From contig NC_068990.1 of NCBI RefSeq assembly GCF_001194135.2, positions 16,843,860-16,881,738 of the forward strand: 37,879 bases of DNA, given 5' to 3'. The notes under the pieces are model-generated. The model ran no database searches. It had not been told where the DNA came from and was given only the letters and a program-made list of their open reading frames with translations. The DNA comes from Octopus bimaculoides. Taxonomy: Eukaryota. Shown in pieces: positions 988-37,879 of the stretch. Position numbers and translations under genes: made by a program. Position 1 is the stretch's first letter. Every line of letters starts with the position of its first letter.

Positions 988-2286
988 TGTATACAGGTGA
1001 ATGTGTGGGGGCAAATGTATGAGTGTATGTGAATGTGTGAGTGGATGTGTGTGGGTGAATGTGTGTATTTTTCTTTCTATCGTTCAACCAATCTCACCAT
1101 CATCACCATCTCACAAGTATAAATGTGTTCCTCTCACCTTACTTTATCCTCCCTCATCAACACACCCTGCTCCTAGAAGTATTGCACCCTTTCTCTTCTA
1201 TTCCTGTTCAGCTATAAGGTCTACTTTAAGCCCCTAGTCATGCAATTTGCAAGTTGATATCACTAGTATGAGTCCCATGTAAGAAGAAAGTCACCCAGTA
1301 CCACTTCCTGTAAAGCTGTAGAAACCAATCCAAAACAGATATTGGCACACAACATCGTCTTTTGACATGTTGGATCCCGTCAAACTATCCAACTCGTGTA
1401 AACATGGAAGATAGGACATTAAAAGATGATGGTGAATCATGTGGGAGAGCAGAGCCCATGACATTTTGTAAGGGTCTCTGAGAGTGACAGGAGGGAGTGA
1501 TGGAAGGAGGAAGATATTTTCAAACCAGAGACTTGACACAAATACTTACAACAGAGTGCTCAAACTAAAGATATCAAAGGTGACAGATTTGTACCTTGAA
1601 TGGAAAGAGGTGGAACAAATACCACAAGATACCCTGGTCTGATACTCTTACAGTACCACCAATTCTAAGGTGCATGCCTTAGGTATTAAGGTGTTGGATT
1701 CATGAACCTAAGATTGAGTTTTTGATTCCTGGACTGGGTAATGTGTTGTGTTCTTGAACAAAACACTTCATTTCATGTCATTCCAGTCTTCTCAGCTGGC
1801 AAAAATAAATAATTCTGCAACAGATCATTTTTCTGTCCAGGAGGGAATGTATGAGCCATGAAAACTAGCCCCTTGTGAGCCTATAGGACCCAAGAAGGAT
1901 CTCTGCCACCAATTCACTGCCTTAGATTGGTATTTCTTATTGGCCCTAAAAGGATGAAAAATAAAGTTGACTCCAGTGGGATTTGATCTCAGGATGCAGT
2001 AAGTTGGAATAAATACCAAAAGGTATTTTATCTGATGCACTAACAAATCTGCCAAGCTGTCACCTAAAATTGGTGTATGTATGTGTGTATATGTATGTAT
2101 GTTTGTGCATGTGTGTGTGTGTGTGTGTGTATGTGTTTGCCTATGACTCACACCACTTGAGAACTGGTTTTGACTTAGCAGTTGGGCAAAAGTGATCAAT
2201 AGATTAAGTATTGGACTTAAAGTAAGTGGAAGGTAAGTCAGAGGGAGAAAGATGAGGAGTGTTGGGGAGGCAGCAGAGAAGCTGTT

Positions 2287-3561: not shown

Positions 3562-4145
3562 CTGGAATGAAATAGAAAACATTTTTCTCAAATAACGAGA
3601 ACAGTAAAACTGCATCATCCCCATATAACATCCATTTTTCGTGCTGGCATGGGTTGGACAGTTTGACAAGATCTTGGCTAACCAGAGAGCTGCACCAGGT
3701 TCCAATTGTCTGTTTGGGAATGATTTTTATGGCTGGATTCACTTCCTAATGCCAACCACTTTACAAGGTGTACTGGATGCTTTTCATGTGGCACCAGCAT
3801 GGAAGCTTTTTATGTGGCACAAGTTGCACAATAATAATAATGCTTTCTCACTGAGGCACAAAGCCAGCATATTTGAGGGGAGGGAGTTAATTATTCTATC
3901 GAACCCAGTACGTGACTGGTACTTATTTTATTGACTCTGAAAAGATGAAAGGCAAAGTTGACCTCAGTAGCATTTGAACTCAGAATGTGCAGACAGACTA
4001 AAATTCCACTAAACCTTTTGTCCAGAGTGTAACTATTTCAGCCAGCTCACCACCTTAAATTAGATATGGAATTATGGAATGCATTAGGTAGTGAGTTTGC
4101 TCTTTAAACTTTGATTAAAGTGGCTAAAGCTTAAAAAGAACTCAC

Positions 4146-4961: not shown

Positions 4962-5256
4962 ACTTTTTAAGCCTGGTGCTTCTTCTATCAGTCACTTTTA
5001 CCAAATCATTAACTTATGGGATGTAAACAAACCGACACCAGTTAAGTAGTGCTGGTGGAACAAACACACACACACATAATGGGCTTCTTTCAGTTTTCAT
5101 CTACCAAATCCACTCATATAAAGGCTTTGGTCAGCCAGAGGCTATAGTAGAAGACACTTGCTCAAAGCATCATGCAGTGGGACTGAACCTGGAACCATGT
5201 GGCTGGCAAGCAAACTTCTTACTAAGTAGTCATGCATATATATAATAAATAAAAAA
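4962..5256 (-). mobile_element. Composite SINE copy (reverse)
   Basis: Reverse complement of head (5081-5256) and tail (4962-5070) separated by (CA)n. Confidence 0.75.
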
Positions 5257-5510: not shown

Positions 5511-5748
5511 GCAGACCTATGTTCAATAGCATTCCAGTCATTCTTTTAAATCTAGTAAGAGTAAAGTGTGAGTTAAAGAGATCAAAATTAAAATCTTCCA
5601 TCAAACTTTCATATCAGTTCTTGTTCCAAACACGAACTTAATAATGACAAATGTTATTTTACTAAATTCTTCATTACTTTTAAAATTAATTGAAAAAAAA
5701 GCAGTGTGTGTCAACAAAAATATGGTATCAAAATGGTAAAAGTCATAC

Positions 5749-5816
5749 CTGGGAACATATAAAACAAGATCAGGTATACAAATATTATCTGGGCCACAAT
5801 CTTTCTGAATTTGGAT
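5749..5816 (-). CDS. Integrin alpha exon (IQIQKDCGPDNICIPDLVLYVP-R, genu)
   Basis: Acceptor ttcacag, donor AG|gtatga; 68 nt, phase 0 to 2; CGxDNxCxPDL genu motif. Confidence 0.96.
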
Positions 5817-6369
5817 CTGTGAAAGAACAAAACATCAAATTGTGATCAGAAGGAAAATTTTACTTGTTAACATTATTGTTGTGATTATTATTATTAAAAG
5901 TTGCTATTTTTTTGTAGATGTTTGTATTGGTTGATTAAACCCTAATGGTTTTTAACCCTGCCAATGATTGCATAGTTACCAATCAGGTGAAGGGGTTTTC
6001 TTTTGGATAGGGTTTAAAATGCTTCTGTGTGTGTGCGTGCATGTGTGTGTGTGCGTGCATGTGTGTGTGCGTGTGTGTGCATGTGTGCGTGCGTGCGCAC
6101 GCAGTATAATCCCAGGTCTGCTGGATCAGATCGACTCTTCGACTAGACAATGGCAGCCTTCTAAGTTCTTTTAGGGGTGGAGAACACAATTACATCATTG
6201 CTATAATTATTATTTCTACATTATGCACAAGTTCTGAAATTTTGTGGAGAGGAGCTAAGCAATTACACTGGACCCCACCCTGACCTCAATTGGTACTTGT
6301 TTTAGCAACCCCAAAAGGCTGAAAGGTGAAGTTGACCATGGTAGAATCATCTTTGGCATAATGATGATG

Positions 6370-6408
<39 letters not shown>

Positions 6409-6473
6409 GTAGTAGTAGTAGTAGTAAAACTAGTGTGAAAAAAAATGTTAAGATTTATGGAAGCTGGCCTTAC

Positions 6474-6605
6474 TGTTGAGATTTTAGTCTCTGATGTGTA
6501 TTTATTCAAGATTGGGGTAAGTTCTCGCTTTTTCCGTCTTTGACTCTCAACAATCTTATATTCCAAGCTCACACCAACTGGAGTCAATTTGTCTCGTATA
6601 TTTTC
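6474..6605 (-). CDS. Integrin alpha exon (ENIRDKLTPVGVSLEYKIVESQRRKKRELTPILNKYTSETKIST, thigh)
   Basis: Acceptor cttttaag, donor ACA|gtaagg; 132 nt, phase 0 to 0; RDKLTP and L.PIL motifs. Confidence 0.95.
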
Positions 6606-6642
6606 CTTAAAAGACAAACAAAAATAAAGAAACCTGTTATAT

Positions 6643-7164
6643 NNNNNNNNNNNNNNNNNNNNNNNNNNNNNNNNNNNNNNNNNNNNNNNNNNNNNNNNNN
6701 NNNNNNNNNNNNNNNNNNNNNNNNNNNNNNNNNNNNNNNNNNNNNNNNNNNNNNNNNNNNNNNNNNNNNNNNNNNNNNNNNNNNNNNNNNNNNNNNNNNN
6801 NNNNNNNNNNNNNNNNNNNNNNNNNNNNNNNNNNNNNNNNNNNNNNNNNNNNNNNNNNNNNNNNNNNNNNNNNNNNNNNNNNNNNNNNNNNNNNNNNNNN
6901 NNNNNNNNNNNNNNNNNNNNNNNNNNNNNNNNNNNNNNNNNNNNNNNNNNNNNNNNNNNNNNNNNNNNNNNNNNNNNNNNNNNNNNNNNNNNNNNNNNNN
7001 NNNNNNNNNNNNNNNNNNNNNNNNNNNNNNNNNNNNNNNNNNNNNNNNNNNNNNNNNNNNNNNNNNNNNNNNNNNNNNNNNNNNNNNNNNNNNNNNNNNN
7101 NNNNNNNNNNNNNNNNNNNNNNNNNNNNNNNNNNNNNNNNNNNNNNNNNNNNNNNNNNNNNNNN
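6643..7164. other. Assembly gap (522 N); other gaps at 15165-15174, 21761-21998, 27341-27515, 31187-31717, 33209-33253, 37238-37370
   Basis: Runs of N in the sequence. Confidence 1.
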
Positions 7165-7536
7165 GTGGATGTTACTGTTGCTTTAGCCCCAGGAGGACAT
7201 CTCCTCCAGCTGGCTTATCGACACACTACTGTGTCCTGTTTGTTTTGCCAAGGGAAGTTATCCCTCTCATCGTGATCTGTAGCACGAACGGACCCGGGTT
7301 TCAGGGTTATTTCCCTTCGTCAGCGTCCGATAGCTACCGACCTTCGATGAGAGATATAAATTCTTGGCAACCTTATGTATATTTTTCCAGTGAAATTCTT
7401 CACTGATATCGAAAAAGTGAAAACAAGCAATGTTAATTCTCTAAATGAAGTATTAACAGTAACTGCACGATAAAGTGAAGTGTATTGCCACTTAAGTGTG
7501 GCTGACCCTTAGGGGTGGATGTTACTGTTGCTTTAG
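7165..7536 (-). mobile_element. 350-bp HHR-containing unit with a 22-bp direct repeat (retrozyme or Penelope pLTR-like)
   Basis: gtggatgttactgttgctttag occurs at 7165-7186 and 7515-7536; the unit contains HHR-1, is CpG-rich relative to its flanks and abuts the gap 6643-7164. Confidence 0.65.
7285..7329 (-). ncRNA. Type I hammerhead ribozyme motif (HHR-1), sense to the integrin pre-mRNA
   Basis: Minus strand reads CGGACG-CTGACGA-AGGG AAATAA CCCT-GAAA-CCCGGGT-C-CGTTCG: intact CUGANGA/GAAA core, 4-bp stem II, palindromic stem III ACCCGGGT, GUC cleavage triplet, 6-bp stem I with further flanking helices. Confidence 0.88.
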
Positions 7537-7932
7537 GTTATGTTTAAAATCAAAATTTAGATAGAAGACTTTAATTTGTCGTATCTAAACCTTGTTTTGG
7601 GTATGTTACTGGTGTGCCTTGGGAGCATGTTCACCACATATGGCTACCAAGCATCATCCACGGTACTGCACTTTAGTCACAGGATCTACATAAGGAATTC
7701 CTCAGTGCATGTTTAGTATATATTAAATAATTGATGGGGAAGACAAAGTACTGTAAGTTTTATTTAGGCACAGGAGTGGCTGTGTGGTAAGTAGTTTGCT
7801 CACCAACCATATGGTTCCGGGTTGTATGTTGTCCATAATTAAAAAAAAAATTCATAGTCAGTGTAAGTAATAGAGTGACCATACTGAATATACTGTGAAC
7901 CCAGCCATGCAGATCTTAAGTAAATGAAATAC

Positions 7933-8081
7933 CTTGAGATAAGCCTGGTGTCGGACAGATTTGGCTTCACCTTTTACTAAAGTGAATGTTTGAGTCTTTG
8001 AGATCTCATTGCCAGCTTCCATGTAAAAAACTCTGTGAGTTTTGTTATTCAAGGCATCTAAGGTCCATTTTACTTCCAAAC
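7933..8081 (-). CDS. Integrin alpha exon (LEVKWTLDALNNKTHRVFYMEAGNEISKTQTFTLVKGEAKSVRHQAYLK, thigh)
   Basis: Acceptor ttttcaaag, donor AAG|gtattt; 149 nt, phase 1 to 0; LD..K..R.F and AYL thigh motifs. Confidence 0.92.
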
Positions 8082-9685
8082 CTTTGAAAAAAAAATCAAA
8101 CAAGTAAGGAAAATGTAAATATATATAAATATACATAAATATAAATAAAAATGCAGTTGTTGTTCTTCTCTTTTTTGTTTGTTTATTAGTATTTTACATA
8201 ATTTTTCTCATCGTTACAGGAATTAAATGTATGGTGAAGGGTATTTTTTTTTAAAGTAATTATTTTTCCAGCTGTCTGCTCTTTTAACTTTTGGCTTGTC
8301 ATATTCATTCGCTTCTTTCATTTTTCCCCATTTATTTTAATTTTATCCAATCTTATTTGAATTAACTCAAAAAATATTTTTATTGTAGTGTTTTATAGTT
8401 GATTTTTTTTATTGTAGCTCTATTCGTCTGCTACAACTGTTGCTTATTGGTTTTTGAAATTTGAAGAAATTTTTATCTTTTTTTCAGGTATAAACCAATG
8501 AAAAGCCAATTGGAAAAAAAATGAATGAATTTATCTAACAACCCAGTACAAACTACGTTTCTTCATCTTGATCCCTCAACTATCAATGGAGTCATAGGGG
8601 GTGGTGTCATGAAACACTGTACATCAGTCCCCATCTAATGCAGTTGTGTGTTAAAGATTTTGCTAGCCTTTGTTAGATGGGTCTTATTGTATCCTGATAT
8701 GGTCATCAACAGCAAGACTAAAGACTTCTTTTTCTTCTGTATGAATGTCTTTCTCTTCATAGTTACTGCTCTCCTTGACTGGCTGCCTGCATATTGGCTT
8801 GCAGAGGTCATATCTTGCATTTATTCCTTTCATTTTTGGTATGGACTTGTCTACCTTAGGATACTGGATACTTCCAGAAATAACCGACAAGTGTATTGTT
8901 AGTTCACAATACTGAGTATGAAATTATCTCATGAGCTATATATACAATAGACTATAATTTCTATCCAGGAAGAGAAACAACATGGCACAAATAGTCATCA
9001 TGATGAAAACTACTATAATTTCTCAGACACCAGGGAAAACAGGTACCAAATTCCACTGGGGGAAATGGTGAAAGATCTTGCCTACCATTTTTTATGGCAT
9101 ACAGGTTGATGTAGTACATAATGTAAACATTTAATGTGAACACTCAAACATTGTCACAATCTTTATAAGTCCTGCTGTGTTTCACATGGAATTTTTGATC
9201 CTCCAAATTCATCTTGGAGAATAATAGGCTGATCTGTTGCCTTTTTGTATGCTGGAAAATACAGTACATTAGATTTAATGAACAGAAACTCTTGGTTCTG
9301 TAATTCAAATTGACACTGGCCCAAAACACTTCAGCATTGAACACAACTACAATTACAGCCATTTGTTAATGAATTATAGGAAATCAATGAGTAATAATTA
9401 AAACACATCATAATTATGTTATTTACTACATGCATTAAGCATTTAGATCAGTGGTTCTCAATTGAGGTCCATATCACCCTTAGGGTTCCATATAAAAGTT
9501 CATTGTTAAAGTTTCAGAGCAAAGGATTTTTATATTTGTATCAAACACAAAGTATTTCAACAATTTTTTTTATCCAATTCCTAATAATATTTAATTATAA
9601 AAATATAACAGGATTTTTTTTTTAACATTGGGGGTCCAGTAGAGTAAAATAGGAATCAAAATTTAGAACAAAAATTAAAACTTAC

Positions 9686-11338: not shown

Positions 11339-13379
11339 CTTAAAAAAAAAAAAAAAAAGAGTAACATTAGTATTGGTCTGAAAGTTTGGCTCAAGGCCAG
11401 CAATTTTGCGGGAGGGGATAAATTGATTACAATGATTCCAGTGCTCAGCTGTTGATAGGCAAAATCGACTCTAGCAGAATTTGAACTCAGAACTTAAAGA
11501 CAGTACTATAATCAACCTAACTCCCTCCCCGGAACTGCTGGAGTTGATGTACTTGACTTAATCCTCCTGCCAAAATTTTGGGCCTTATGCCTATAGTAGA
11601 AAGGATTATTATTATTGTATTCACCAAGTTCAAAAGGATGACTGTGTCTTTCATCCTTTTGGGGGGTCAATAAAATAAGGTATCAGTTGAGCACTTGCCC
11701 CCCTCCCTCAAAATTTATAACTCTGAGCTAAAATTTGAAACCATTCTTACTTCCCACATTGTAAAGTGGTGAACTGGTAGACTCATTAGTGTATCAGACA
11801 AAATGCATTGTGGCCCCTTAACTAACGAAGTACAGGCGTTGATGTAAATGACTAATCACACACTTCCTAAAAATTGCAGGTTTTGTGCCAATATTTGAAA
11901 GAATAGTTAATCTCCACATTGTTCTATCCTGCATTATTCCCTAATGTTTTTATGAACCCTAAGTAGAAGAAAAAGAGAAAACAATACTGCTACAAGTACT
12001 ATTGTTATCATCCTCATCACTATGGCTACTACTATTGTTATCATCATCATCATCATCACTACAATTACTATTATTGTTGTGGTTGTTATTTTGATGGAAG
12101 GGGATCCAGAGATTAATTTCATTGAGAAATTCTGAACCTTTTGGGTTTATAGCCTTTCAAAAAATCTTCCTTAAGTAGATGAGGAAATAAAACCTAAAAG
12201 GTCGCATTAATTTGTTAGGGTATTGTAAACGAGTGGGAGGGGCAGCTGAGATGATGGGGGGTGCTTTCAATTGGTTTTATATTTGTTACATCCATCTATC
12301 TAGTTGTTTTATTTTGTGTTGTATTCTGTGTAGTAGAGAGAATCATGGAAAGAGTAGAGAGAGAGAGGAGGGAGGGAGAGATAAAAACAGAGACATATGT
12401 AGAGGCAACGAATTCCCAAGGGAAACAGTTAAATATAAGCAGAACATAGGAAGGCAATGTGGAGGGGTAGGGTTGAGAAGCAAAACAGTTATACATGGTA
12501 GTGGTGAAATAGATTGATGGAAACAATTCTGTTTATTCCAGAAGGGTTTAGGATGAAGCTTGAGAGAATTGTAAATAAAACAGGCTATTATGATAATCAC
12601 CCTCCACCTCTCCACACACACACATAGAGATAGATGTGAAGATACACACAGTTACATGAACATTAAGCAAAATCCCTCTATTGAAAGAAGGATGAATGTT
12701 GTCAGCTGTAGATGTGTTTACAATAAATTCACTAAAATTTGTGAGAATTGAGGACAATCTATGTTGGTAAGATTAGAATTGAAGCAAGCAAAAAAATAAA
12801 ATTAATTTTTCATGAGATGGTGAAATAAGTTTTGTACAAAGGTTTTCACCAATCAGACATTAAATTGTTTTGTTGTTGTTTAACCCTAGGTCAACCTTGA
12901 TTGAGTAGAACTAGAATCAAATGCATTCAGATCATGAATATATTTTTCTTCTGGCAATCTGATACAGATTTTATGTTATTCATTGAGTTGTTTCCTTTCT
13001 CAGATGGTTCGTTGTTGTTTCGGTGAGATGTGAAGATGCAGGGTTTGACTGAGGCAGATTTGGTTATAAAGCTTACAGGACATGCTCAAAAGAGATGTCA
13101 CTGATATTAAGATGGTTGGTGATTTTGAGAGAGACTTGTTTCTTAAGATAGTAGGGGTGGGATTCAGAAAGATTTGGTTCTATGATAGTAAGGTGTAAGT
13201 AATTCAATGAGTTTTGTCTCTATTTCTGTTATGTCAAATGACTGCATAAAGGCTTCTTCGTTTGTTCACTTTAGTTCTGTTCTATATTTGATGGCTAATT
13301 AGTTGGAAGACAAACAACAAACCAAAATGTTAAGGGTTCATATTCTTTCACAACAACTGTATTTTGTCTGTAGTCAACA

Positions 13380-13770: not shown

Positions 13771-15174
13771 TCCATATACATATGAAGAATAATTTAAAAT
13801 GGACTTTAAAATGATGATGGTGGTGGTGGTGGTGGTAGTGGCTGTAATGGCAGTGATGAGGGTGATGAAGAGGATATTGATGGTGGTGGTGGTGGTGGAG
13901 GTTGCACAGGTAGTTGGCGGTGGTGGTGGAGACATTGATGACTACAATAATCATGATGATGATGATATCTCAAAGTGTTTAGTTACCCTAGTTTGTAAGA
14001 GAACTTCGGATAAAAGCAACAAAAAAAAAAATGGATGAAAAATAAATAAATAAAATCTTGTATATTGCACTTGATTCCCAACATCGTTCTTTCACTTATT
14101 TGACCTTTTCAGCAACAAATCAACTAAATTTAACAAAAAGAACTAACAACAAACAACAAGACAAATAGGGACACATCAGAAGAACATACATAATATTTGA
14201 TGGTGGTACAGAAGACACAGACACATGGACAATGTAAAAAACTGCCTGCTCAATTTTGGCTGGGAATATACAAGAAAAAAACTGTTTTGTCTATTTAAGT
14301 ATTCAATATTTACTGAAATGTGAAGCTACAGTATAGCAAACATAAAACAAAAATGGTTGTTAATTCATTAAAAAAAAGTAATAACAAAAATGTTATATTT
14401 TGGATAGGTCACTTTGCCAATAAAAGTACATGCACTGGTTATATTTATTATTATTATTATTAGTCAATTAATTCTTTCTAATTTTAGCACAAGGCCAGCA
14501 ATTCTGAGAGGAGGAGAAGTCAATTACATTGACCCTAGGGTTCAACTGGTACTTTATTTTATCAACCCCAAAAGGATTAAAGGCAAAGTTGACTATAGCA
14601 GCATTTGAACTCAAACATAAAGAGTTGGAAAAATGCCTCTAAGCATTTTGTCCAATGCAGTAATGATTCTTCTAGCTTGCTGCTATTAGTCAGCTAATTA
14701 AGTAATTTACTAATTGATTACATAACTGATTGTTTGATCTGCCAATCACTCGGCTGATTTATTTGAATATTTTCATTATTGTTCATGACATTATCAATGA
14801 TGGTCCTTCATTCTTCCAGTTCCATCGTGTGCTGCACAGAAACTTAACAGTAAAGCAAATCACAAAAATACTTGGTGCAGCAAACCAAGAAATTTTAATT
14901 AACTAATTTATTTTGATAGGAGACTGGCAATTTTGAGGGGAGGGGACTAATAGATTACGTTTTACCTCAGTACTTGTTTCTTTATTTCATTGACCCCCCA
15001 AACAGAAAAAGCCAAAGTTGACCATGGCTTGATTTGAGCTCAGAATGTAATAAACCAGAAGAAATGCCACTAAGCAATTTGTTTGACGCACTTCTGATTT
15101 TGCCAGCTTGCCTCCTTTGTTTCAAATTTTTGCACAAGGCTAGCAATTTTAGGTGGAAGTGGGGNNNNNNNNNN

Positions 15175-16644: not shown

Positions 16645-16962
16645 CTGAAAATGAATAATAAAACTTTTAATTAAAAGAAAAAAAACTGGTGAATGCAACA
16701 CACACACTCACAGAGGCATACAGAGTAAAAGGAATAAAATTATTGAAGATATTGAAGTATATAGCTCCCCCACCCCCACCATGTCCTGTATATAAATTCC
16801 ATCAGGGTTTGACTTCATCTGTTAACTCTCCAGGGTCTGATGGAATGAGTACAAGTAATACACTAAGGCATATTTCAAATGGCTAACTGAAAAGTCAGTC
16901 TAGTGTGTGTGCGTATATGTATATATACATACACACATATTTATGTATGTATGTATATATGT

Positions 16963-17133
16963 AGGCATAGGCATGGTTATATGGTAAGAAGCTTGCTTCC
17001 CAATCATATGGTTCTAGGTTCAGTCCCACAGCAGGGCACCTTGGGCAAGTGTTTTCTCTTAAATCCTTGAGCTGACCAAAGCCTTGTGAATGGATTTGGT
17101 AAATGGAAACTGAAAGAAGCCTGACATATATGT

Positions 17134-17220
<87 letters not shown>

Positions 17221-17780: not shown

Positions 17781-18583
17781 TATATGTATGTATATATATA
17801 TAACATCATTATCACCTTTGCTAACATTTGTTTTCTATCATCAACCTCATCATTTTCTTTTAATGTTTGTCTTTGTGCTGTGTGAGGAGCAACATGCCAA
17901 AAATTAGACCCAATTTTTCCTTGGCATATCGGAGAAGGTGGCTTACGAAGGTTGAGGTAGGGTTTGCACTCCAACTTCATAAAACCCTCACCAGCAATGA
18001 CGACCCATAGAGACCCATGGGTTGGAGGGTTATCACCTGAGTGGGGCAAAGATGTCAACAGCCAGAAGTAGGGAATCACTAGCACATGCCACATAATACT
18101 ACAACTTCTATTCCCATGCTGGCATGGGTTGGATGGTTTGAGAGGATATCATGGGTCCAAGGACTGCATTGTGCTCATATATGTATGTACGCGTGCACAC
18201 ATGTACTGTCAATGTTAATTAAATTAGCAAGAAATGGCTATTATGTAATTAAAATAATAATAATTCTTTCAAATTTTGGTACAGGACCAGCAATTTTAGT
18301 GGAAGAGGGCTTGCTAATTTCATCAACTAATTTAATGTTGCCCTAATAACAATCTTTTCTTCTATAGGGACAGGGCCTGGAATTTTGGTGGAGAGGGCTA
18401 GTTGTTTATATTGACCCTAATACTCAGCTGGTACTTATTTTATCAAATCTGAAAGGATGAAAGGCAAAGTTGACCTTAGCAGAGTTTGAACTCAGAATGC
18501 AGTGAGTCAGAAGAATTAACACTATAAACTACTATTTAATACTATTTTGTCTGGTGAATAACAATTTTGCCAACTCACCAACT

Positions 18584-18614
<31 letters not shown>

Positions 18615-19550
18615 TAAACAAAGAAAGAAAGAAAAAATAAGGGAGCTGAAATTACAGTTGGAATCTAATCAAAATGCCAAGATTTTCTTTGTGATAGTAA
18701 GAAATTTACGATTGCCTTTCCAACAGAATGATCTCTGTGAAGTGAGAGAACTTTGGATTTTTCTATTCAAAATGCCTAGATTTTGATTTCAGATATCTGA
18801 AACAAAATTTATATTTGATTGAGGAGTGAAATGCCATTGATTATTGCACATTTAGCATCCAGAGTAACTTGATATTTTAATGAAATTTAAAGATAAAGAG
18901 GAAGGAAATGAAAATAAATGGGAAAACTCCCCAAACTTCTGCTTTACAATTATTGTAGTTTGAATGACTCAGTGAAGAGTTACTTCAGTTACAGGAATAG
19001 AAAGATTGAGGAGAATGTAAATAGTAACTGTTTATCTATTTTATAAATTTATACAATTCTGTTTGTTTGTTTTATGCATGATTTTTTTTCTTCCATGATA
19101 ACATGGGTTAGATGAGTATATATTACTGATACATTATTTTAACCAGCTGTCATTCATGCAACTCATCTTTACTTGTTGTTCAAGCAAAGAATTTTTTGTT
19201 CTACATTTGTTTGACAGTATAGAATATAGACATTCATAAAAGATGTGTGAGTACACAAACACACATATTCATATATATATATATGTGAAGTGCACATTAA
19301 TTTCATGAGCAAGGCACACTCAATGTTGTATCCAAGAGAGTGCCTGTTTTTATATCTACAAACATACATTTGGTTGTTTTGTTTGTAACATGTCACCTGC
19401 AAAAGCCTTTCTTAAACCAAGGATTAAGCAAAACCAAATGAGACAATATTCTCAGCATTGTATTATTGGATCCTTTATTTTTGATTGTCTTGAAAATGTC
19501 GGTACACAGAAGCTGGAAACATGAGATTGTTGGTCGTTAAAGCTACTTAC

Positions 19551-19648
19551 CTGTGCAGGTTCAGCGATAACACCCTTCACAGATCCATGGTAAATATACA
19601 CGGCACCTTTGCCATCTTTACCTCCATAGGGAGCAGAAGTGGCAAAAT
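19551..19648 (-). CDS. Integrin alpha exon (DFATSAPYGGKDGKGAVYIYHGSVKGVIAEPAQ)
   Basis: Acceptor ttttccag, donor CAG|gtaagt; 98 nt, phase 1 to 0; APYGG..GAVYIYHG motif. Confidence 0.96.
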
Positions 19649-19689
19649 CTGGAAAAGTATAAAAAAAGTTATTAGTTATTCTAATTGTC

Positions 19690-20040
19690 AGGATCATGAT
19701 AATAACGATGACAATAATTAGCATTGTTGTCATTGTGGTCTTCACCATCAACATCATCATCACTGTTGTCATTATCACCATACCGATGATAATCGTCAAT
19801 GTTACCACTGTCATCATCATCATCATTGACATCATCTTCACAACCACCACCACCATCCTCCCCATCATCATCATCACCACCTTCAACATCATCACCATTA
19901 TTATCAAAATTGTCATTGTTTTGCTGTGATCATCATGGTCATCATCAATATCATCACCATCATCTTCAACATCACTATTGTTATCAATATTGTCATCATT
20001 ATCATCATCAACGACCCTTGTCCTTATCAGCATCATAGGT
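19690..20040. repeat. Long degenerate (ATC/ACC)n trinucleotide tract
   Basis: About 350 bp of CAT/CAC/TGT-interrupted repeats; source of the spurious low-complexity ORFs here. Similar tracts at 11985-12090 and 13805-13970. Confidence 0.9.
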
Positions 20041-20522
20041 ATCACTTTGCATCCACTTTTTCCATGCTGGCATAAGATTGCCAGAGACTTCTTGAAGCAG
20101 CACTGCACACTAACTGGCTATATTCCAGGAACCAATTCTTATTTACTTCTTCCAACTAAGGCATTTGATTCTATACTTTCACCTATCAAAGCATCAAACA
20201 GCCAAACTTTTTTTTATCTATGTAAGACTTAATCCAATTTCATTGCTGCCCAAAGACAACACATAAACATGTCATTTTAAAGTTCATTTTTCCATGGTTG
20301 AATGAGTCAGATTTATTGAGGCAAATTCTCTATGACTGGATGCCCCTCCTGTCACCAACCGTCACCAGTTTTCTGGTAAGGTTATATTTCCCCATGGCCT
20401 GACATGTTTGCTTTGAAGACTGGAAAGGTATAACACCACCTGTATGACAACGCAAACATACACAAATAAAAATGCATACACACCCTACCACAACATGCAC
20501 AAACAAAACAGTTGAAACTCAC

Positions 20523-21552: not shown

Positions 21553-21760
21553 TAGGCGCAGGAGTGGCTGTGTGGTAAGTAGCTTGCTTACCAACCACAT
21601 GGTTCTGGGTTCAGTCCCACTGCATGGCACCTTGGGCAAGTGTCTTCTACTATAGCCTCAGGCCGACCAAAGCCTTGTGAGTGGATTTGGTAGACGGAAA
21701 CTGAAAGAAGCCCGTCGTATATATGTATATATATATATATGTATGTGTGTGTATATGTTT
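21553..21760 (+). mobile_element. Composite SINE head plus (TA)n, running into gap 21761-21998
   Basis: Little-diverged, CpG-retaining copy (ggcgcagg, ggccgacc, agacggaaac, cccgtcg). Confidence 0.85.
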
Positions 21761-21998
21761 NNNNNNNNNNNNNNNNNNNNNNNNNNNNNNNNNNNNNNNN
21801 NNNNNNNNNNNNNNNNNNNNNNNNNNNNNNNNNNNNNNNNNNNNNNNNNNNNNNNNNNNNNNNNNNNNNNNNNNNNNNNNNNNNNNNNNNNNNNNNNNNN
21901 NNNNNNNNNNNNNNNNNNNNNNNNNNNNNNNNNNNNNNNNNNNNNNNNNNNNNNNNNNNNNNNNNNNNNNNNNNNNNNNNNNNNNNNNNNNNNNNNNN

Positions 21999-22180: not shown

Positions 22181-23712
22181 CTGAAAGATTAATTAAAAAT
22201 AAATTAATAAATAAAAGAATGAACAAAAAAAAAATTAAAATAAATTGAAATGGAGTTTTAATATGGCTGTGAGGTTAAAAAGCTTGCTTTACAACCATGT
22301 TCAGTCCCACTGAAGGACCTCTTTGGCATGTATCTTCTACTATAAACTCAGGACGATCAACACCTTAAGAGTGGATTTGGTCAGCAGAAACTGTATGAAA
22401 GCCCATCATATATATTATATAAATGAAAAAATATATAAACAAATGACATAACATACTGAATGTAAAAACAAACAGGAGACAAAGAGAAAGTCCATAATTC
22501 TTCATCAGTTATCGACCAACGGGACACTTCAGTTTCACACCTTTAACGATAAGACTGAATGCTTCCCAAATGGCAGTGCACGCAAAAAAAAGTTTTCTTG
22601 CATAGAATTAGGGACAAGAGCAAACAAAACGAAACAAAACAAGCAAAACGACGCAGTGTGATTTAGAACAGGGAACAAGGACAAACAGTTGAACAAAATA
22701 TGGCCTTGGGGCCAAAAAGAGAAGAATAGTAGGTAATGCTTCGAAAATGTTTTGAACAATGGAGAACTGTTAGACAGAATTTGCAACTGGTCAGCTAAGG
22801 GACCAATATAAGAAAGGAAGAAAAAGAGGAATTGGCTGCTGGTCACATGACAGCAGCATATGTGTGTGAGTGTGTGTGTGTTACCTTGCTGCATAACACC
22901 TGGTGTTGCTTTGTTTATGTCTCTGTAACATTAGTAGTTTAGCAAAAGAGTCCGATAGAATAAGCACCAGATTTTAAAAGTAAGTCATTGGGGTTGATCT
23001 GGTCAACTAAAACCCTTCAAGGTAGTGTTCCAGCATGGCCACAGTCCAGTGATCGGAACAAGTAAAAGATAGAATGAAAGTAATTTTAGGTGAAGTGGAG
23101 AGAAGGGTGCTATGTGGTCACTCTACATGCTAGAAAAAGCCACCAAATACCCTCAAATAACACCTAACTGGTTTATGTAAAGAAAAGGCAACATTATAAT
23201 GATAGTGAATGATATTGTAATCTCATGCTCTTCTAAAATCATGCCATGGTTGTAGCTGGAAAGTTTTTGATCTCGTCAGCTTTGGGATCTAGAATCAGTG
23301 AAGTTTTGGTGAATTTGAAATTTGAAGACTTTAATATCATCTTAGTAATGAGAAAATCAGTTGTTTTACTACATTTTTCTAAATGTTTAATGCAGTCACT
23401 CATGTATAAGTTGCATACAAATTTTTTTCCCCTTGTATTTTTAGCTATGTTCTGTGTATAAGTTGCACCCCAGTTTTTTCACTTAAAATCAACTATAGAA
23501 TAATACAACTTAACCATGAGTAAATACAGCAATTATTTTCAAAATGAAATGAAATAAAAAGACAGTGCATTTCATTGGAAACATTGTAAAGAAAGGGTTA
23601 AGATGAAGCTCCACATACATGCCGACTAATTATTATTTTTACAAGTTCTTTTAAAAATTATGGGTGGAGTAGCAGACTAGGAAGTAGAAAGGGAAATAAA
23701 CTCCTGAGTAAT

Positions 23713-24135
23713 AGGCACAGGCGTGGCTGTGTGGTAAGAATCTTGCTCCCTAACCACATGGTTCCGGGTTCATCCCCACTGTGTGGAAGCTTGAGCAAGT
23801 GTCTTCTACTATAGCCTCAGGCTGACCAAAGCCTTGTGAGTAGATTTGGTAGATGGAAACTGGAAGAACCCCATCGTATATGTATGTATATATATATGTA
23901 TGTATATATGTATGTATATATTTTGTGTGTGTGTGTGTGGTTGTGTTTGTTCCCCTGCCATTGCTTGACAACCGATGGTGGTGTGTTTATGTCCCTGTAG
24001 CTTAGCAGTTTGGCAAAAGAGACCAATAGAATATGTACTAGGCTTACAAAAAATAAGTCCTGGGGTCGATTTCTTCGACTAATAGCCTTTAAGGCGGTGC
24101 TCCAGTATGGCCACAGTCAAGTAAAAGAATAAAAA
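23713..24135 (+). mobile_element. Composite SINE, full-length copy ending about 25 nt from the 24159 splice donor
   Basis: aggcacaggcgtggctgtgtggtaagaa head, (TA/TG)n middle, tail ending gtaaaagaataaaa. Confidence 0.85.
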
Positions 24136-27838: not shown

Positions 27839-28374
27839 CTGTAAAATATTAAATATAAATGCCATATTGTAGTCTTAAGCAGAAGATGAGATATTACACT
27901 CCCTTAGGCTATTATTATTATTATTACTATTATTATTATTATTACTATTACTATTATCATTATTAACCCTTTTGTTACAATATTTTTGTTGAGATGATCT
28001 GTGTTTCTTTCAATTAATTTTAAATATTACAAAGGATTTAGTAAAATAACTTAGTTATCTTTTAGGAACATAAGTTGTGACTAAGGTTTGGTGGAAGATA
28101 TTAATTCAGAATTTTTGAAAACAAGACATTTGTTTTCAACTGGTATTTATATTATTGACTCTGAAAAGATGCAAAGCAAAGTTGACAGAATTTGAACTCA
28201 GAATGTAAAGACAGACAAAATGCCACTAAGCATTTTGCCTGGCATGCCAATGGTTCTGCCAGCTTGCCTGTCTTACACAAATTTTGTAATATTGCTAACT
28301 TTAAAACATTTGATTATCCTTTACTTAACTAAGAAATGAATGTTACTAAAACAGAGAAAATGTGTTTGTCTCAC

Positions 28375-29852: not shown

Positions 29853-30049
29853 CTAGGCACAAGACTTGAAATTTTGGTGGAGGGGGCCCAGTCGATTAGA
29901 TCAACCCCAGTACACAGCTGGTACATAATTTATTGACCCCAAAAGGACGAAAGGCAAAGTCAACCTTGGTGGAATTTGAACTCAGAACGTAAGGACAGAC
30001 GAAATACCGCTAAGCATTTTGCCTGGCGTTTCTGCCAGCTCACCGCCTT
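29853..30049 (-). mobile_element. tRNA-derived SINE with Meta/Sauria-like central domain (third family)
   Basis: Minus strand aaggcggtgagctggcagaa...gttctgagttcaaattcc...gcctttcgtccttttggggtcaataaa; related copies at about 3853-4058, 14485-14685, 14922-15112, 18367-18580, 21213-21350 and 31976-32160. The superfamily name is from memory. Confidence 0.75.
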
Positions 30050-35849: not shown

Positions 35850-36257
35850 AGCAAGCATGACCGTGTGATAAGAAGCTTGCTTCCCAAACACATGGTTCCA
35901 GGTTCAGTCCTACTGCATAGCACCTTGGGCTAGTATTTTTTACTATAGCATTGTAAGTGGATTTGGTAGCTGGAAACTGAAAGAAGACCATCAAGTATAT
36001 GTGTGTGTGTGTGTATGTGTGTGTGTGTGTGTGTGTGCATGCATGTGTGTTTATGTCTGTGTTTGTCCCCCACTACTGTTTGACAACCAGTATTGATGTG
36101 TTTACATCCTTGTAACTTAGCAGTCCAGTAGAAGTCACTGATAGAATAAGTATCAGGTTTAAAAGAAAAGTACTGCAGTCAATTCATTCAACTAAAATTC
36201 TTCAAGGCAGTGCCCCAGCATGGCCACAGTCTAATGACAGAAACTGGTAAAAGATAA
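35850..36257 (+). mobile_element. Composite SINE copy
   Basis: Same head, (TG)n middle and tail ending ggtaaaagataa. Confidence 0.8.
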
Positions 36258-37733
36258 CAACAGCATTACAGCTTCAAACTTGCAAGAATGTGATTTGCTG
36301 TCAAAAGTTTTTTCAGTAACCAATCCATGCCAAGCTTATGTTTTTCTGCCTCTTTCCACTGTTTTCAATAACTTATTCTGTTTATTATTAATAGCTCTTC
36401 TTCACACATAATAAAACACTTCTTGACACTCTTTCATTTCCTTTCATAAAACTTTATTATTTTCCACGTGAGCAGCTGGTCTGATGATACAGATACCGCA
36501 TCTTTGTAAGTTATTATTAGTAAACAGGTTATTGGTCTGCAGTTAAAAACATCCCGATTATGAAAGAAATTTGGCTGCTATTTTTAGCAAATTGAGCAAC
36601 CATGTAAAGGCTGCCTCTTTCAAGTCGTCATATTTAATTAGTTGTGATAGTTGACAGTTCTTACAAACAAAACAGATGAAAAATAGTAGTAAAAGAATTC
36701 TGTTTTTACCCTATCAGCCAGCATCCTGAGGCTATTTTAAGTCAGCAGATGCCCTAAATGTGAAACCCTGTATGGGGTCTCCTCTTGACTCACCATACTG
36801 ACTTCCTCACTATCATAGATGACCCCACAAAACACTAAATGACTTGGAGACAATTAGGAAACAGAGTCAAAATAGAAACACAACCTGATGGGGGAATTAA
36901 CAGATGTTATTATTAGGAAATATGAGACTAATGAATCATTGAGAAGCTCAGCACTAATACAGTAAATCATTGTCAGACATTGCTGTGTGGTTAAGGAGCT
37001 GACTTCCCAACCACAGGGTTTATGGTACAATCCCACTGTTTGTCAGTTTATGGAGTTTGTATTTTTTTCATGGCTTTGAGTTGACCAATGCCTTCTAAGT
37101 GAAATTTGGTAGATAGCGACTGTTTGGAAGTCCATCCTATATATGTGTGTTTGTAAGCATGTGTTTTAAGTGCATGTGTACGTGCACACACACACACACA
37201 CATATGTATATAAAAATATATATATACAGACACACACNNNNNNNNNNNNNNNNNNNNNNNNNNNNNNNNNNNNNNNNNNNNNNNNNNNNNNNNNNNNNNN
37301 NNNNNNNNNNNNNNNNNNNNNNNNNNNNNNNNNNNNNNNNNNNNNNNNNNNNNNNNNNNNNNNNNNNNNNNATATATAAACAAATAGTAAATGAGTATAT
37401 GCATATATACGTACAGGTATGTGCATACCGACATCCACCTGTATGTATAGGTGCATATCTGGGTACAGGACATTGCAAACAAACGTAGACGAGAAAACAC
37501 ACAAGCCACATAGAGAACATTCTACTTCATCAGCTACCCACGTTTTAATGAAAGATAAAAAGCACCCATGGCAGTGTCATATTTAGAGCACCTCATGCTG
37601 GTGCCACATAAAATTCATTCAGCCACAGAAACCATGACTAAACAGACAATTGGAGTGTGGGCAGTTCTCTGGTTGGTTAGTCCCTGTCAAACCATCCAAC
37701 TCATGCAAGCATGGAAAACAGACGTTAAATGAT

Positions 37734-37879
37734 GGGGTTGGAAATGAGTACAGCAATGAATTCCGGGTAGAGGTAGGGGTCCACCAAGGTTCCGTCCTCA
37801 GCCCCCTCTTATTTATCATAGTCCTCCAGGCAATCACAGAGGAGTTCAAGACAGGTTGCCCCTGGGAGCTCCTCTATGC
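37734..37879 (+). mobile_element. 5'-truncated RTE-type LINE, reverse transcriptase fragment (runs off the window)
   Basis: Stop-free frame GVGNEYSNEFRVEVGVHQGSVLSPLLFIIVLQAITEEFKTGCPWELLY(A): non-LTR RT motif GVxQGSVLSPLLF leading into the expected YADD. Confidence 0.9.

What the first reader, a model, noticed from the sequence alone, without database searches (positions are those of the whole stretch)
6643..7536. Candidate cephalopod retrozyme: a 350-bp hammerhead-bearing unit probably tandemly repeated into the gap
Seen: the 22-mer gtggatgttactgttgctttag recurs with a period of exactly 350 bp (7165 and 7515); the unit holds HHR-1, has no evident coding capacity and runs straight into a 522-N gap. 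Known: animal non-LTR retrozymes are tandem units of a few hundred bp, each with a type I hammerhead, processed into circular RNAs; they have been described in amphibians, cnidarians and bivalves. Inference: a second unit in the gap would put another hammerhead at about 6935-6979, supply the dimer partner in cis and release a roughly 350-nt monomer from the integrin intron. A Penelope pLTR remnant is the main alternative. I cannot tell whether this family is already catalogued.
Basis: partly seen in the sequence, partly recalled or inferred. Interest (0 to 1): 0.85.

Follow-up and report, generated by a model that had tools for sequence, protein, structure and literature searches.

The report
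Hammerhead-ribozyme repeat in an integrin intron
A 350-bp non-coding repeat unit carrying one intact self-cleaving hammerhead ribozyme sits in an intron of an integrin alpha gene and restarts just before an assembly gap; it looks like an ordinary member of the known animal "retrozyme" class, but the second ribozyme needed to make RNA circles cannot be seen.

Summary
The 22-mer occurs exactly twice, 350 bp apart (7165 and 7515), with none expected by chance. The left copy starts at the first base after the 522-N gap. One canonical type I hammerhead lies on the minus strand at 7329-7285: helix I 6 bp, helix II 4 bp, helix III 2 bp with the palindromic loop CCGG, and cleavage after C7291. It is the only such motif in the window; 2 of 300 shuffles gave any hit. 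No frame is open beyond 86 aa. The unit is 43% GC against 33% in the flanks, and its 350-nt RNA folds far better than shuffles (z about -5.9).

These features fit a non-LTR retrozyme better than a Penelope pLTR. The ribozyme is not the Penelope minimal type, and no RT or GIY-YIG sequence lies within 4 kb.

Only 1.06 units are readable, so the defining feature, two consecutive ribozyme-bearing units, is untested. No other copy could be reached with the tools. No Rfam hammerhead model matches the motif, and its 10.1-11.1 pair is A-U instead of the usual G-C.

The ribozyme is sense to the host integrin alpha gene.

Verdict: a probable new member of a known kind, of modest interest.

The parts
7165..7536 (-). 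Readable part of the repeat: one full 350-bp unit plus the first 22 nt of the next unit. In RNA sense, on the minus strand, it starts at 7536 and runs into the gap.
   Evidence: GC is 43% against 33% in the flanks. No ORF exceeds 86 aa.
7515..7536 (-). The 22-mer at the 5' end (RNA sense) of the first unit. The boundary with unrelated flank is at 7536/7537.
7165..7186 (-). The same 22-mer one period (350 bp) later: the start of a second unit, cut off by the gap.
6643..7164 (.). Assembly gap of 522 N (estimated length). It may hold the rest of the second unit. The predicted second cleavage site would be near 6941 if the gap size were exact.
   Evidence: This is inference only.
7279..7337 (-). 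Type I hammerhead ribozyme. Distal helix I is GUAGC (7337-7333) paired with GCUAC (7283-7279). Loop 1 is UAU (7332-7330) opposite U (7284). Proximal helix I is CGGACG (7329-7324) paired with CGUUCG (7290-7285). The core CUGACGA is at 7323-7317. Helix II is AGGG/CCCU with loop AAAUAA (7316-7303). GAAA is at 7302-7299. Helix III is A-U and C-G with loop CCGG (7299-7292). C17 is at 7291.
   Evidence: Read directly from the sequence. The descriptor scan gave a single hit in the window, and 2 of 300 shuffles gave any hit. The relaxed minimal-hammerhead scan found nothing else.
7290..7291 (-). Predicted self-cleavage site, 3' of C17 (7291).
   Evidence: Position follows from the hammerhead numbering. 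Cleavage was not tested.
7245..7272 (-). 3' arm of an inverted repeat that extends helix I into a long stem closing the monomer RNA.
7345..7370 (-). 5' arm of the same inverted repeat.
7933..8085 (-). Upstream integrin alpha exon (approximate 5' limit). The GT of the 5' splice site is at 7932-7931. The repeat starts 396 nt into the intron.
   Evidence: pairwise E = 8e-6 to an integrin alpha fragment. The splice site was read.
5748..5816 (-). Core of the next integrin alpha exon downstream, containing the CGPDNICIPDL motif.
   Evidence: tblastn with P0008 and P0009; for neighbouring Ig-like domain exons.

Best explanation
This is a copy of a short, non-coding retroelement of about 350 bp that carries a hammerhead ribozyme. 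It belongs to the non-LTR retrozyme kind. It is inserted in sense orientation 396 nt into an intron of about 2.1 kb of an integrin alpha gene, and it is present as a short head-to-tail array whose far end lies in the assembly gap.

Proposed working, with each step marked:
1. The array is transcribed on the minus strand, most simply as part of the integrin pre-mRNA (inferred from orientation).
2. Each unit's type I hammerhead cuts after C17 (the motif is shown; cleavage is inferred). Helix III is only 2 bp with a palindromic loop, and the single active fold is predicted to be much less stable than an inactive alternative. The ribozymes of two neighbouring units would therefore most likely pair through the 8-bp palindrome ACCCGGGU into a double hammerhead (predicted).
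3. [quoted passage not shown] It folds into a compact, highly paired structure (the fold is predicted with z about -5.9; the release is inferred).
4. A host RtcB-type ligase circularises the monomer, and a reverse transcriptase from Penelope-like elements copies the circle into new, often multimeric, insertions. This step is taken from the published model and was not tested here.

If the gap holds less than about 245 nt more of the unit, there is only one ribozyme. The locus would then be an inert solo copy.
For: - The exact 22-nt restart after 350 bp has zero chance expectation. The restart sits at the very edge of the contig, which is what is expected if the repeat continues into unassembled sequence.
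- Five of the seven gaps in the window are flanked by simple repeats. At this gap the only repeat at an edge is the unit itself.
- There is a single hammerhead with a full catalytic core and helices of 6, 4 and 2 bp. This is exactly the 'canonical metazoan' architecture described in PMC4209133.
- The unit size of 350 bp, GC of 43% and lack of ORF or homologues match the published retrozyme description.
- The monomer RNA folds at -111 kcal/mol against -78.5 +/- 5.5 for shuffles. Helix I is extended by a 26-28-nt inverted repeat.
- The predicted double hammerhead is -57.1 kcal/mol against 2 x -25.8 for two monomers.
- The host gene and the ribozyme are on the same strand.
- Penelope-like elements are reported in octopus and other cephalopod genomes.
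Against: - Only 1.06 units are readable, and a second hammerhead is not seen.
- The 300 bp left of the gap share nothing with the unit. The array therefore ends inside the gap or something else lies there.
- TRF finds no tandem repeat.
- There is no second copy of the unit in 37.9 kb, and no copy was reachable elsewhere. Those collections probably do not hold this genome.
- No Rfam hammerhead model matches, even at E <= 10.
- The 10.1-11.1 pair is A-U, where G-C is described as highly conserved. Activity may therefore be low.
- A 2026 preprint finds retrozymes depleted in introns.
Confidence: 0.5

Rival explanations
1. Solo monomer. A single unit of about 328-350 bp of the same retroelement family is flanked by a short terminal duplication: a target-site duplication or the 30-40-bp 'tail' seen at Penelope-type insertions. 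The gap holds unrelated repetitive DNA. With one ribozyme it can at most cut the intron RNA once and cannot release a circle.
For: Only 22 nt of repeat are visible. The left flank of the gap is unrelated to the unit. Published work reports many solo monomers and large target-site duplications for these elements, and 30-40-bp tails for Penelope-like insertions.
Against: The repeat begins exactly at the contig edge. That needs a coincidence if the duplication is only 22 bp, whereas a repeat continuing into the gap needs none. An unassembled stretch of about 500 bp next to the unit is most simply more of the same unit.
Confidence: 0.3
2. Penelope-like element remnant. The unit is the pseudo-LTR of a truncated or partly assembled Penelope-like retrotransposon, and the ribozyme is its pLTR hammerhead.
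For: Penelope-like elements carry type I hammerheads in their pLTRs and insert as partial tandems that break short-read assemblies. They are reported in octopus genomes. A preprint places retrozymes as sister to pLTRs.
Against: The ribozyme has the canonical 6/4/2-bp architecture with a loop 1 and a loop 2. It does not have the minimal Penelope form, which has helix II of 6-8 bp, helix I of 4-5 bp, a bulged base after A9 and no helix III. The repeat period is 350 bp, not about 3 kb. There is no RVT_1 or GIY-YIG hit in any ORF piece of at least 35 aa between 3000 and 11500. The estimated gap of 522 bp is too small for an ORF of about 2.5 kb.
Confidence: 0.1
3. Assembly artefact. The 22-nt duplicate at the contig edge was produced by the assembler or gap closer, for example a de Bruijn loop or a k-1 overlap. 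The genome then holds one copy with no duplication.
For: The duplicate sits at the first base after a gap. A 22-nt overlap equals k-1 for k = 23 (my inference; the assembler is unknown).
Against: Such overlaps normally arise only where the sequence really is repeated at length k or more. Typical gap-edge artefacts duplicate sequence across the gap, not 350 bp apart on one side of it. The hammerhead, the fold and the composition do not depend on the duplicate.
Confidence: 0.07
4. Chance hammerhead-like motif in ordinary intron sequence, with no mobile element.
For: No Rfam model matches. The 10.1-11.1 pair is A-U.
Against: The descriptor hit rate in shuffles is 0.01 per window at looser thresholds than those observed. 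The motif lies inside a compositionally distinct block with a sharp boundary, a 350-bp restart and a fold z-score of about -5.9.
Confidence: 0.03

Closest known systems
Metazoan non-LTR retrozymes (Cervera and de la Pena 2020, PMC7229834): coral, mussel and axolotl families, with the mussel family of about 350-390 bp closest in host phylum
   Same: Unit of a few hundred bp (350). GC below 50%. No coding capacity. One type I hammerhead per unit with 6-bp helix I, 4-bp helix II and a short helix III capped by a palindromic loop. A highly self-paired monomer RNA. The unit restarts head to tail.
   Different: Only 1.06 units can be read, so tandem organisation with at least two ribozymes is unproven. 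No sequence comparison with published families was possible. The 10.1-11.1 pair is A-U. The element is in an intron in sense orientation. No RNA data are available.
Newt and salamander satellite 2 hammerheads, and axolotl Rtz_331 and Rtz_353
   Same: A repeat of about 330-350 bp. A weak helix III with a palindromic tetraloop, implying action as a double hammerhead between neighbouring units. Helix III here, at 2 bp plus a tetraloop, is like HHR_Amex2.
   Different: [quoted passage not shown] Here one short locus is seen. The host phylum is different and no sequence relation has been shown.
Minimal hammerheads in pseudo-LTRs of Penelope-like elements (Cervera and de la Pena 2014, PMC4209133; Lunse et al. 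2017)
   Same: Type I topology. A palindromic 15.2-16.2 region, implying dimer action. Association with partial-tandem insertions that disturb assemblies. These elements are the probable source of the reverse transcriptase.
   Different: The Penelope-type motifs have a long helix II, a short helix I without a defined loop 1, a bulged base after A9 and no helix III, and they flank an RT/GIY-YIG ORF about 3 kb apart. None of this is seen here.
Schistosoma Sm-alpha SINE-like element with a canonical type I hammerhead
   Same: A short non-coding retroelement of about 330 bp with one canonical type I hammerhead, found dispersed as well as in tandem. The similarity of the loop sequences is from my own recollection only.
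   Different: No sequence relation was tested, and no RNA polymerase III promoter boxes were looked for systematically.
Intronic hammerheads of amniotes (HH9 and HH10 in RECK, CTCL, DTNB)
   Same: A type I hammerhead in sense orientation inside an intron of a protein-coding gene.
   Different: Those are single, deeply conserved, domesticated motifs that match Rfam models. This one sits in a repeat unit, looks like a transposon insertion, and matches no Rfam model.

Membership tests
Hammerhead ribozyme, type I (canonical metazoan form) | Catalytic core C3 U4 G5 A6 N7 G8 A9 ... G12 A13 A14 ... A15.1-U16.1, with H17 at the cleavage site | tested here: met
   CUGACGA at 7323-7317, GAAA at 7302-7299, U16.1 at 7292 and C17 at 7291 on the minus strand.
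Hammerhead ribozyme, type I (canonical metazoan form) | Open helix I of 6 bp followed by an internal loop 1; helix II of 4 bp capped by a loop 2 (PMC4209133) | tested here: met
   Helix I is 6 bp, then UAU/U, then 5 more bp. Helix II is 4 bp with the 6-nt loop AAAUAA (and the sequence). It was the single hit in the window, and 2 of 300 shuffles gave any hit.
Hammerhead ribozyme, type I (canonical metazoan form) | Short helix III (1-2 bp) with a small (2-4 nt) palindromic loop | tested here: met
   A-U and C-G pairs with the loop CCGG. ACCCGGGU is an 8-nt palindrome.
Hammerhead ribozyme, type I (canonical metazoan form) | Highly conserved G10.1-C11.1 pair | tested here: not met
   The pair is A10.1-U11.1 (7316 and 7303). 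It is still a Watson-Crick pair. Compensatory changes at this pair are reported in cricket satellite hammerheads.
Hammerhead ribozyme, type I (canonical metazoan form) | Match to a curated covariance model (the Rfam hammerhead families) | tested here: not met
   No hammerhead family was reported at gathering score or at E <= 10, even on a 96-nt slice.
Hammerhead ribozyme, type I (canonical metazoan form) | Self-cleavage at the predicted site | not testable with these tools
   This needs in vitro transcription of monomer and dimer constructs.
Non-LTR retrozyme | Tandem repeat with at least two consecutive units, each with a complete hammerhead (operational definition in 10.64898/2026.07.22.740005) | tested here: inconclusive
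   1.06 units and one hammerhead are readable, and the rest is an N gap. TRF finds no array.
Non-LTR retrozyme | Unit of about 150-450 bp, GC below 50%, no LTR, PBS or PPT, and no ORF | tested here: met
   The unit is 350 bp and 43% GC, with the longest open frame 86 aa and no Pfam or protein homologues.
Non-LTR retrozyme | Monomer RNA predicted to be compact and highly self-paired | tested here: met
   The circular fold is -111.1 kcal/mol against -78.5 +/- 5.5 in 200 shuffles, giving z = -5.9, with 60% of bases paired.
Non-LTR retrozyme | Multi-copy family in the genome, in dimers to multimers | not testable with these tools
   There is no other copy in the window. The protein, ORF and pattern searches were empty, but these collections appear not to hold this genome.
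Non-LTR retrozyme | Expressed as linear and circular RNA of unit length | not testable with these tools
   No transcript data are available.
Non-LTR retrozyme | Co-occurrence with Penelope-like elements in the same genome | not tested
   Support comes from the literature only: Penelope-like elements are reported in octopus and squid genomes. The source organism of the window was not verified.
Penelope-like element pseudo-LTR | Flanks an ORF encoding RT and GIY-YIG endonuclease; direct repeats about 3 kb apart | tested here: not met
   There is no RVT_1 or GIY-YIG hit in ORF pieces of at least 35 aa between 3000 and 11500 on either strand. The repeat period is 350 bp. The content of the gap is unknown.
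Penelope-like element pseudo-LTR | Minimal hammerhead: long helix II, short helix I, an extra base between A9 and 10.1, and no helix III | tested here: not met
   The observed architecture is 6/4/2 bp with defined loops. The relaxed minimal-hammerhead scan finds no other motif.

The most novel reading that the evidence does not exclude
This would be the first documented cephalopod retrozyme family. It would be present here as a dimer inside an integrin alpha intron in sense orientation, so that the host gene's own transcription feeds a double hammerhead that excises a 350-nt RNA, later circularised, out of the pre-mRNA. Its ribozyme would be an A10.1-U11.1 variant that current Rfam models miss, which would imply that such elements are under-counted in mollusc genome annotations.
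Probability: 0.25. Interest if true: 0.45.

Novelty: new member of a known kind. Interest (0 to 1): 0.3.

Why it matters
If confirmed, it would extend hammerhead-bearing circular-RNA retroelements to cephalopods. It would also give a concrete locus where a host gene's intron transcript could be the precursor of a ribozyme-processed circle.

It is also a small warning for annotation. A hammerhead with a complete core and textbook helix lengths escaped every Rfam model, so counts of such elements based on Rfam alone are likely to be low.

Beyond that it adds an example to a class already described in many invertebrate phyla, and it does not open a new question.

Tried and rejected
- **Rfam.** I ran it at gathering score on the whole window, at E <= 10 on 5600-9000, and at E <= 10 on 7255-7350. 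No hammerhead was reported. The only hits were microRNA-like matches on a (TG)n tract and noise.
- **Other copies through translated frames.** I searched the 79-aa frame, then a concatenation of all other open pieces from six frames of a virtual tandem. Neither gave a homologue.
- **The same locus or its orthologue through the host gene.** A concatenation of integrin exons found only fragments at 51-69% identity from other organisms, not this gene. These fragments were useful only for mapping exons.
- **Exact-ORF look-ups.** Two flank ORFs and two unit ORFs are not on record.
- **Pattern scans for the ribozyme.** The metagenome, bacterial/archaeal genome and viral collections gave no hits with the specific pattern. 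A looser pattern gave one unrelated GC-rich bacterial contig lacking U16.1 and helix I.
- **TRF.** It found nothing.
- **Pfam on raw six-frame references.** I repeated the scan with stop-free pieces.
- **A YADD motif at about 15440 (+).** It has no RT hit and I dropped it.
- **Own covariance model.** I considered building one from remembered hammerhead sequences and rejected the idea, because sequences recalled from memory are not a sound basis.
- **The exhaustive profile search of protein representatives.** I did not use it. The unit is non-coding and the two word-based searches were empty.

Full report
**The observation**

The 22-mer GTGGATGTTACTGTTGCTTTAG occurs at 7165-7186 and 7515-7536 on the plus strand. 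It occurs nowhere else in the window, even with three mismatches, and no shuffle gave a match. The spacing is exactly 350 bp.

The left copy starts at the first base after the N run 6643-7164. The right copy ends sharply at 7536, after which the sequence is unrelated. What can be read is therefore one complete unit plus 22 nt of the next, or 1.06 units. Tandem Repeats Finder accordingly reports nothing.

The 300 bp left of the gap share no more than chance 7-12-nt words with the unit or with the right flank. Continuity across the gap cannot be shown, and the array, if there is one, must end inside the gap.

The scaffold join itself looks sound. Integrin alpha exons lie on the minus strand, in N-to-C order, on both sides of the gap: FG-GAP repeats at about 19.6 and 16.6 kb, Ig-like domain 1 at about 11.3 kb, an exon at about 8085-7933, the CGPDNIC exon at 5816-5748, and Ig-like domain 2 at about 4.2 kb.

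**The ribozyme**

The hammerhead is on the minus strand. Read 5' to 3' from 7337 to 7279, it runs as follows.

| Element | Sequence | Coordinates |
|---|---|---|
| Distal helix I, 5' strand | GUAGC | 7337-7333 |
| Loop 1, 5' strand | UAU | 7332-7330 |
| Proximal helix I, 5' strand | CGGACG | 7329-7324 |
| Core | CUGACGA | 7323-7317 |
| Helix II and loop 2 | AGGG-AAAUAA-CCCU | 7316-7303 |
| Core | GAAA | 7302-7299 |
| Helix III and loop | C-CCGG-G | 7298-7293 |
| U16.1, then C17 (cleavage site) | UC | 7292-7291 |
| Proximal helix I, 3' strand | CGUUCG | 7290-7285 |
| Loop 1, 3' strand | U | 7284 |
| Distal helix I, 3' strand | GCUAC | 7283-7279 |

A descriptor I wrote required the core boxes, helix I of at least 4 bp, helix II of at least 3 bp and helix III of at least 2 bp. 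It finds this one site in both strands of the window, with helices of 6, 4 and 2 bp. Of 300 dinucleotide-preserving shuffles of the window, 2 gave any hit. A relaxed descriptor for the minimal Penelope type finds nothing else.

The architecture is word for word the 'canonical' metazoan type I hammerhead of Cervera and de la Pena (PMC4209133). That description is helix I of 6 bp, helix II of 4 bp, and helix III of 1-2 bp capped by a 2-4-nt palindromic loop.

Two things do not fit:
- No Rfam hammerhead model reports the site, even at E <= 10 on a 96-nt slice.
- The pair next to the core is A10.1-U11.1, where G-C is called highly conserved.

I cannot tell whether the second point fully explains the first. 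Both lower the confidence that the ribozyme is fast.

**The unit**

- The unit is 43% GC in flanks of 33%.
- In a virtual tandem no frame stays open beyond 86 aa.
- None of the frames has a homologue or a Pfam hit.
- Cut at the predicted site, the 350-nt RNA folds at -111.1 kcal/mol as a circle, against -78.5 +/- 5.5 for shuffles (z = -5.9; none of 200 shuffles did as well).
- Helix I is prolonged by a 26-28-nt inverted repeat (7245-7272 with 7345-7370) into a long stem that closes the molecule.
- For the isolated ribozyme, the active single fold scores -14.8 kcal/mol and an inactive alternative scores -25.8.
- Two copies are predicted to form the classic double hammerhead through the 8-bp palindrome ACCCGGGU, at -57.1 kcal/mol against -51.6 for two separate monomers.

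The published data say, however, that invertebrate motifs with a 2-bp helix III can also cut alone.

**What it is**

The published description of animal non-LTR retrozymes has these features (PMC7229834 and PMC7761336):
- tandem units of 150-450 bp;
- GC below 50%;
- no coding capacity;
- a canonical type I hammerhead per unit;
- highly paired monomer RNAs found as circles.

Every feature that can be read from one unit is met.

The Penelope pLTR rival is weakened for four reasons:
- Those ribozymes are the minimal type, with a long helix II, a short helix I, a bulged base after A9 and no helix III.
- Their repeats lie about 3 kb apart around an RT/GIY-YIG ORF.
- No RVT_1 or GIY-YIG signal is found in any open piece of at least 35 aa between 3000 and 11500.
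- The estimated gap is far too small for such an ORF.

A 2026 preprint argues that retrozymes derive from pLTRs in any case. It also gives an operational definition of an active retrozyme: a TRF-detected tandem with at least two consecutive ribozyme-bearing units. The readable sequence does not meet that definition.

**The gap**

Five of the seven gaps in the window are flanked by microsatellites. This one is not, and the only repeat at its edge is the unit. That the restart coincides with the contig edge is what one expects if the repeat continues into unassembled sequence.

An overlap of 22 nt would equal k-1 for a k = 23 de Bruijn assembly. This is my inference, as the assembler is unknown. 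It shows only that the repeated stretch is at least about 23 nt, not that a whole unit follows.

A second cleavage site needs at least 245 more nt of the unit. I put that at roughly even odds. The main rival is a solo copy with a short terminal duplication or 'tail', as described for Penelope-type insertions.

**Context and working**

The unit starts 396 nt downstream of a GT 5' splice site (7932-7931) in an intron of about 2.1 kb. The ribozyme has the same polarity as the gene, so the pre-mRNA carries it in active sense.

With two units, double cleavage would free a 350-nt RNA with 5'-OH and cyclic-phosphate ends. This is the substrate of RtcB-type ligases in the published model. With one unit, the ribozyme could only nick the intron.

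Penelope-like elements, the proposed source of reverse transcriptase, are reported in octopus and other cephalopod genomes. The same preprint finds retrozymes depleted in introns, so the position is mildly unusual but not remarkable.

**Novelty**

The held literature has six papers that mention non-LTR retrozymes, and none deals with cephalopods. The giant squid genome paper lists 235 Rfam 'hammerhead 1' hits without further comment. The 2020 paper states that such repeats occur 'from molluscs to arthropods'.

This is therefore at most a new member of a known kind. I could not check Dfam or Repbase, and I did not verify the source organism.

**Limits**

No tool gave access to the rest of this genome. 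Copy number, tandem organisation elsewhere, relation to Penelope termini and expression all remain open.

Noticed in passing
window 16962-17163, 21553-21754, 23712-23913, 35851-35949 (+); 5121-5239 (inverted); fragment 7765-7830: A tRNA-like SINE family is present in at least five copies at 75-89% identity. One fragment lies about 230 bp to the right of the hammerhead unit.
   Followed up: no
window 1932-1991, 3923-3982, 6297-6356, 11430-11489, 14554-14613, 14983-15042, 18435-18494, 28147-28206, 29925-29984: A second dispersed repeat, seen as nine copies of a core of about 60 nt (AAAGGATGAAAGGCAAAGTTGAC...TTTGAACTCA). One copy lies about 290 bp left of the gap.
   Followed up: no
window 37638-37877 (+): A reverse-transcriptase fragment (weak RVT_1 hit, E = 1.2e-4) runs off the end of the window. 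By eye it looks like a LINE-type RT, not a Penelope-like one.
   Followed up: partly
window gaps at 21761, 27341, 31187, 33209, 37238: Five of the seven assembly gaps are flanked by microsatellites or homopolymer runs ((TA)n, (GA)n/(TG)n, A-run, (GA)n, (CA)n). Gaps in this assembly therefore mostly mark repeats.
   Followed up: yes
window 6027-6113 (+): The sub-threshold Rfam matches to mir-297, mir-466, mir-2060 and others fall on a (TG/CG)n tract. They are low-complexity false positives.
   Followed up: yes
window 19455-20117 (-): A 221-aa open frame rich in D, M, V and I runs through trinucleotide-repeat DNA. It overlaps an FG-GAP exon of the integrin alpha gene. Only its C-terminal part looks like real coding sequence.
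   Followed up: no
window 7291-7329 (-): A hammerhead with a complete core and canonical helix lengths scores below E = 10 against all Rfam hammerhead models. The A10.1-U11.1 pair and C7 are the visible departures from the usual consensus.
   Followed up: partly
L001 1429-1454 (+): A GC-rich, apparently bacterial metagenome contig carries CTGATGAAGGGAAATAATCCTGAAAC in an intergenic stretch. It has the same helix II and loop as the window's ribozyme, but no U16.1 and no helix I were found. It is probably a chance match.
   Followed up: partly
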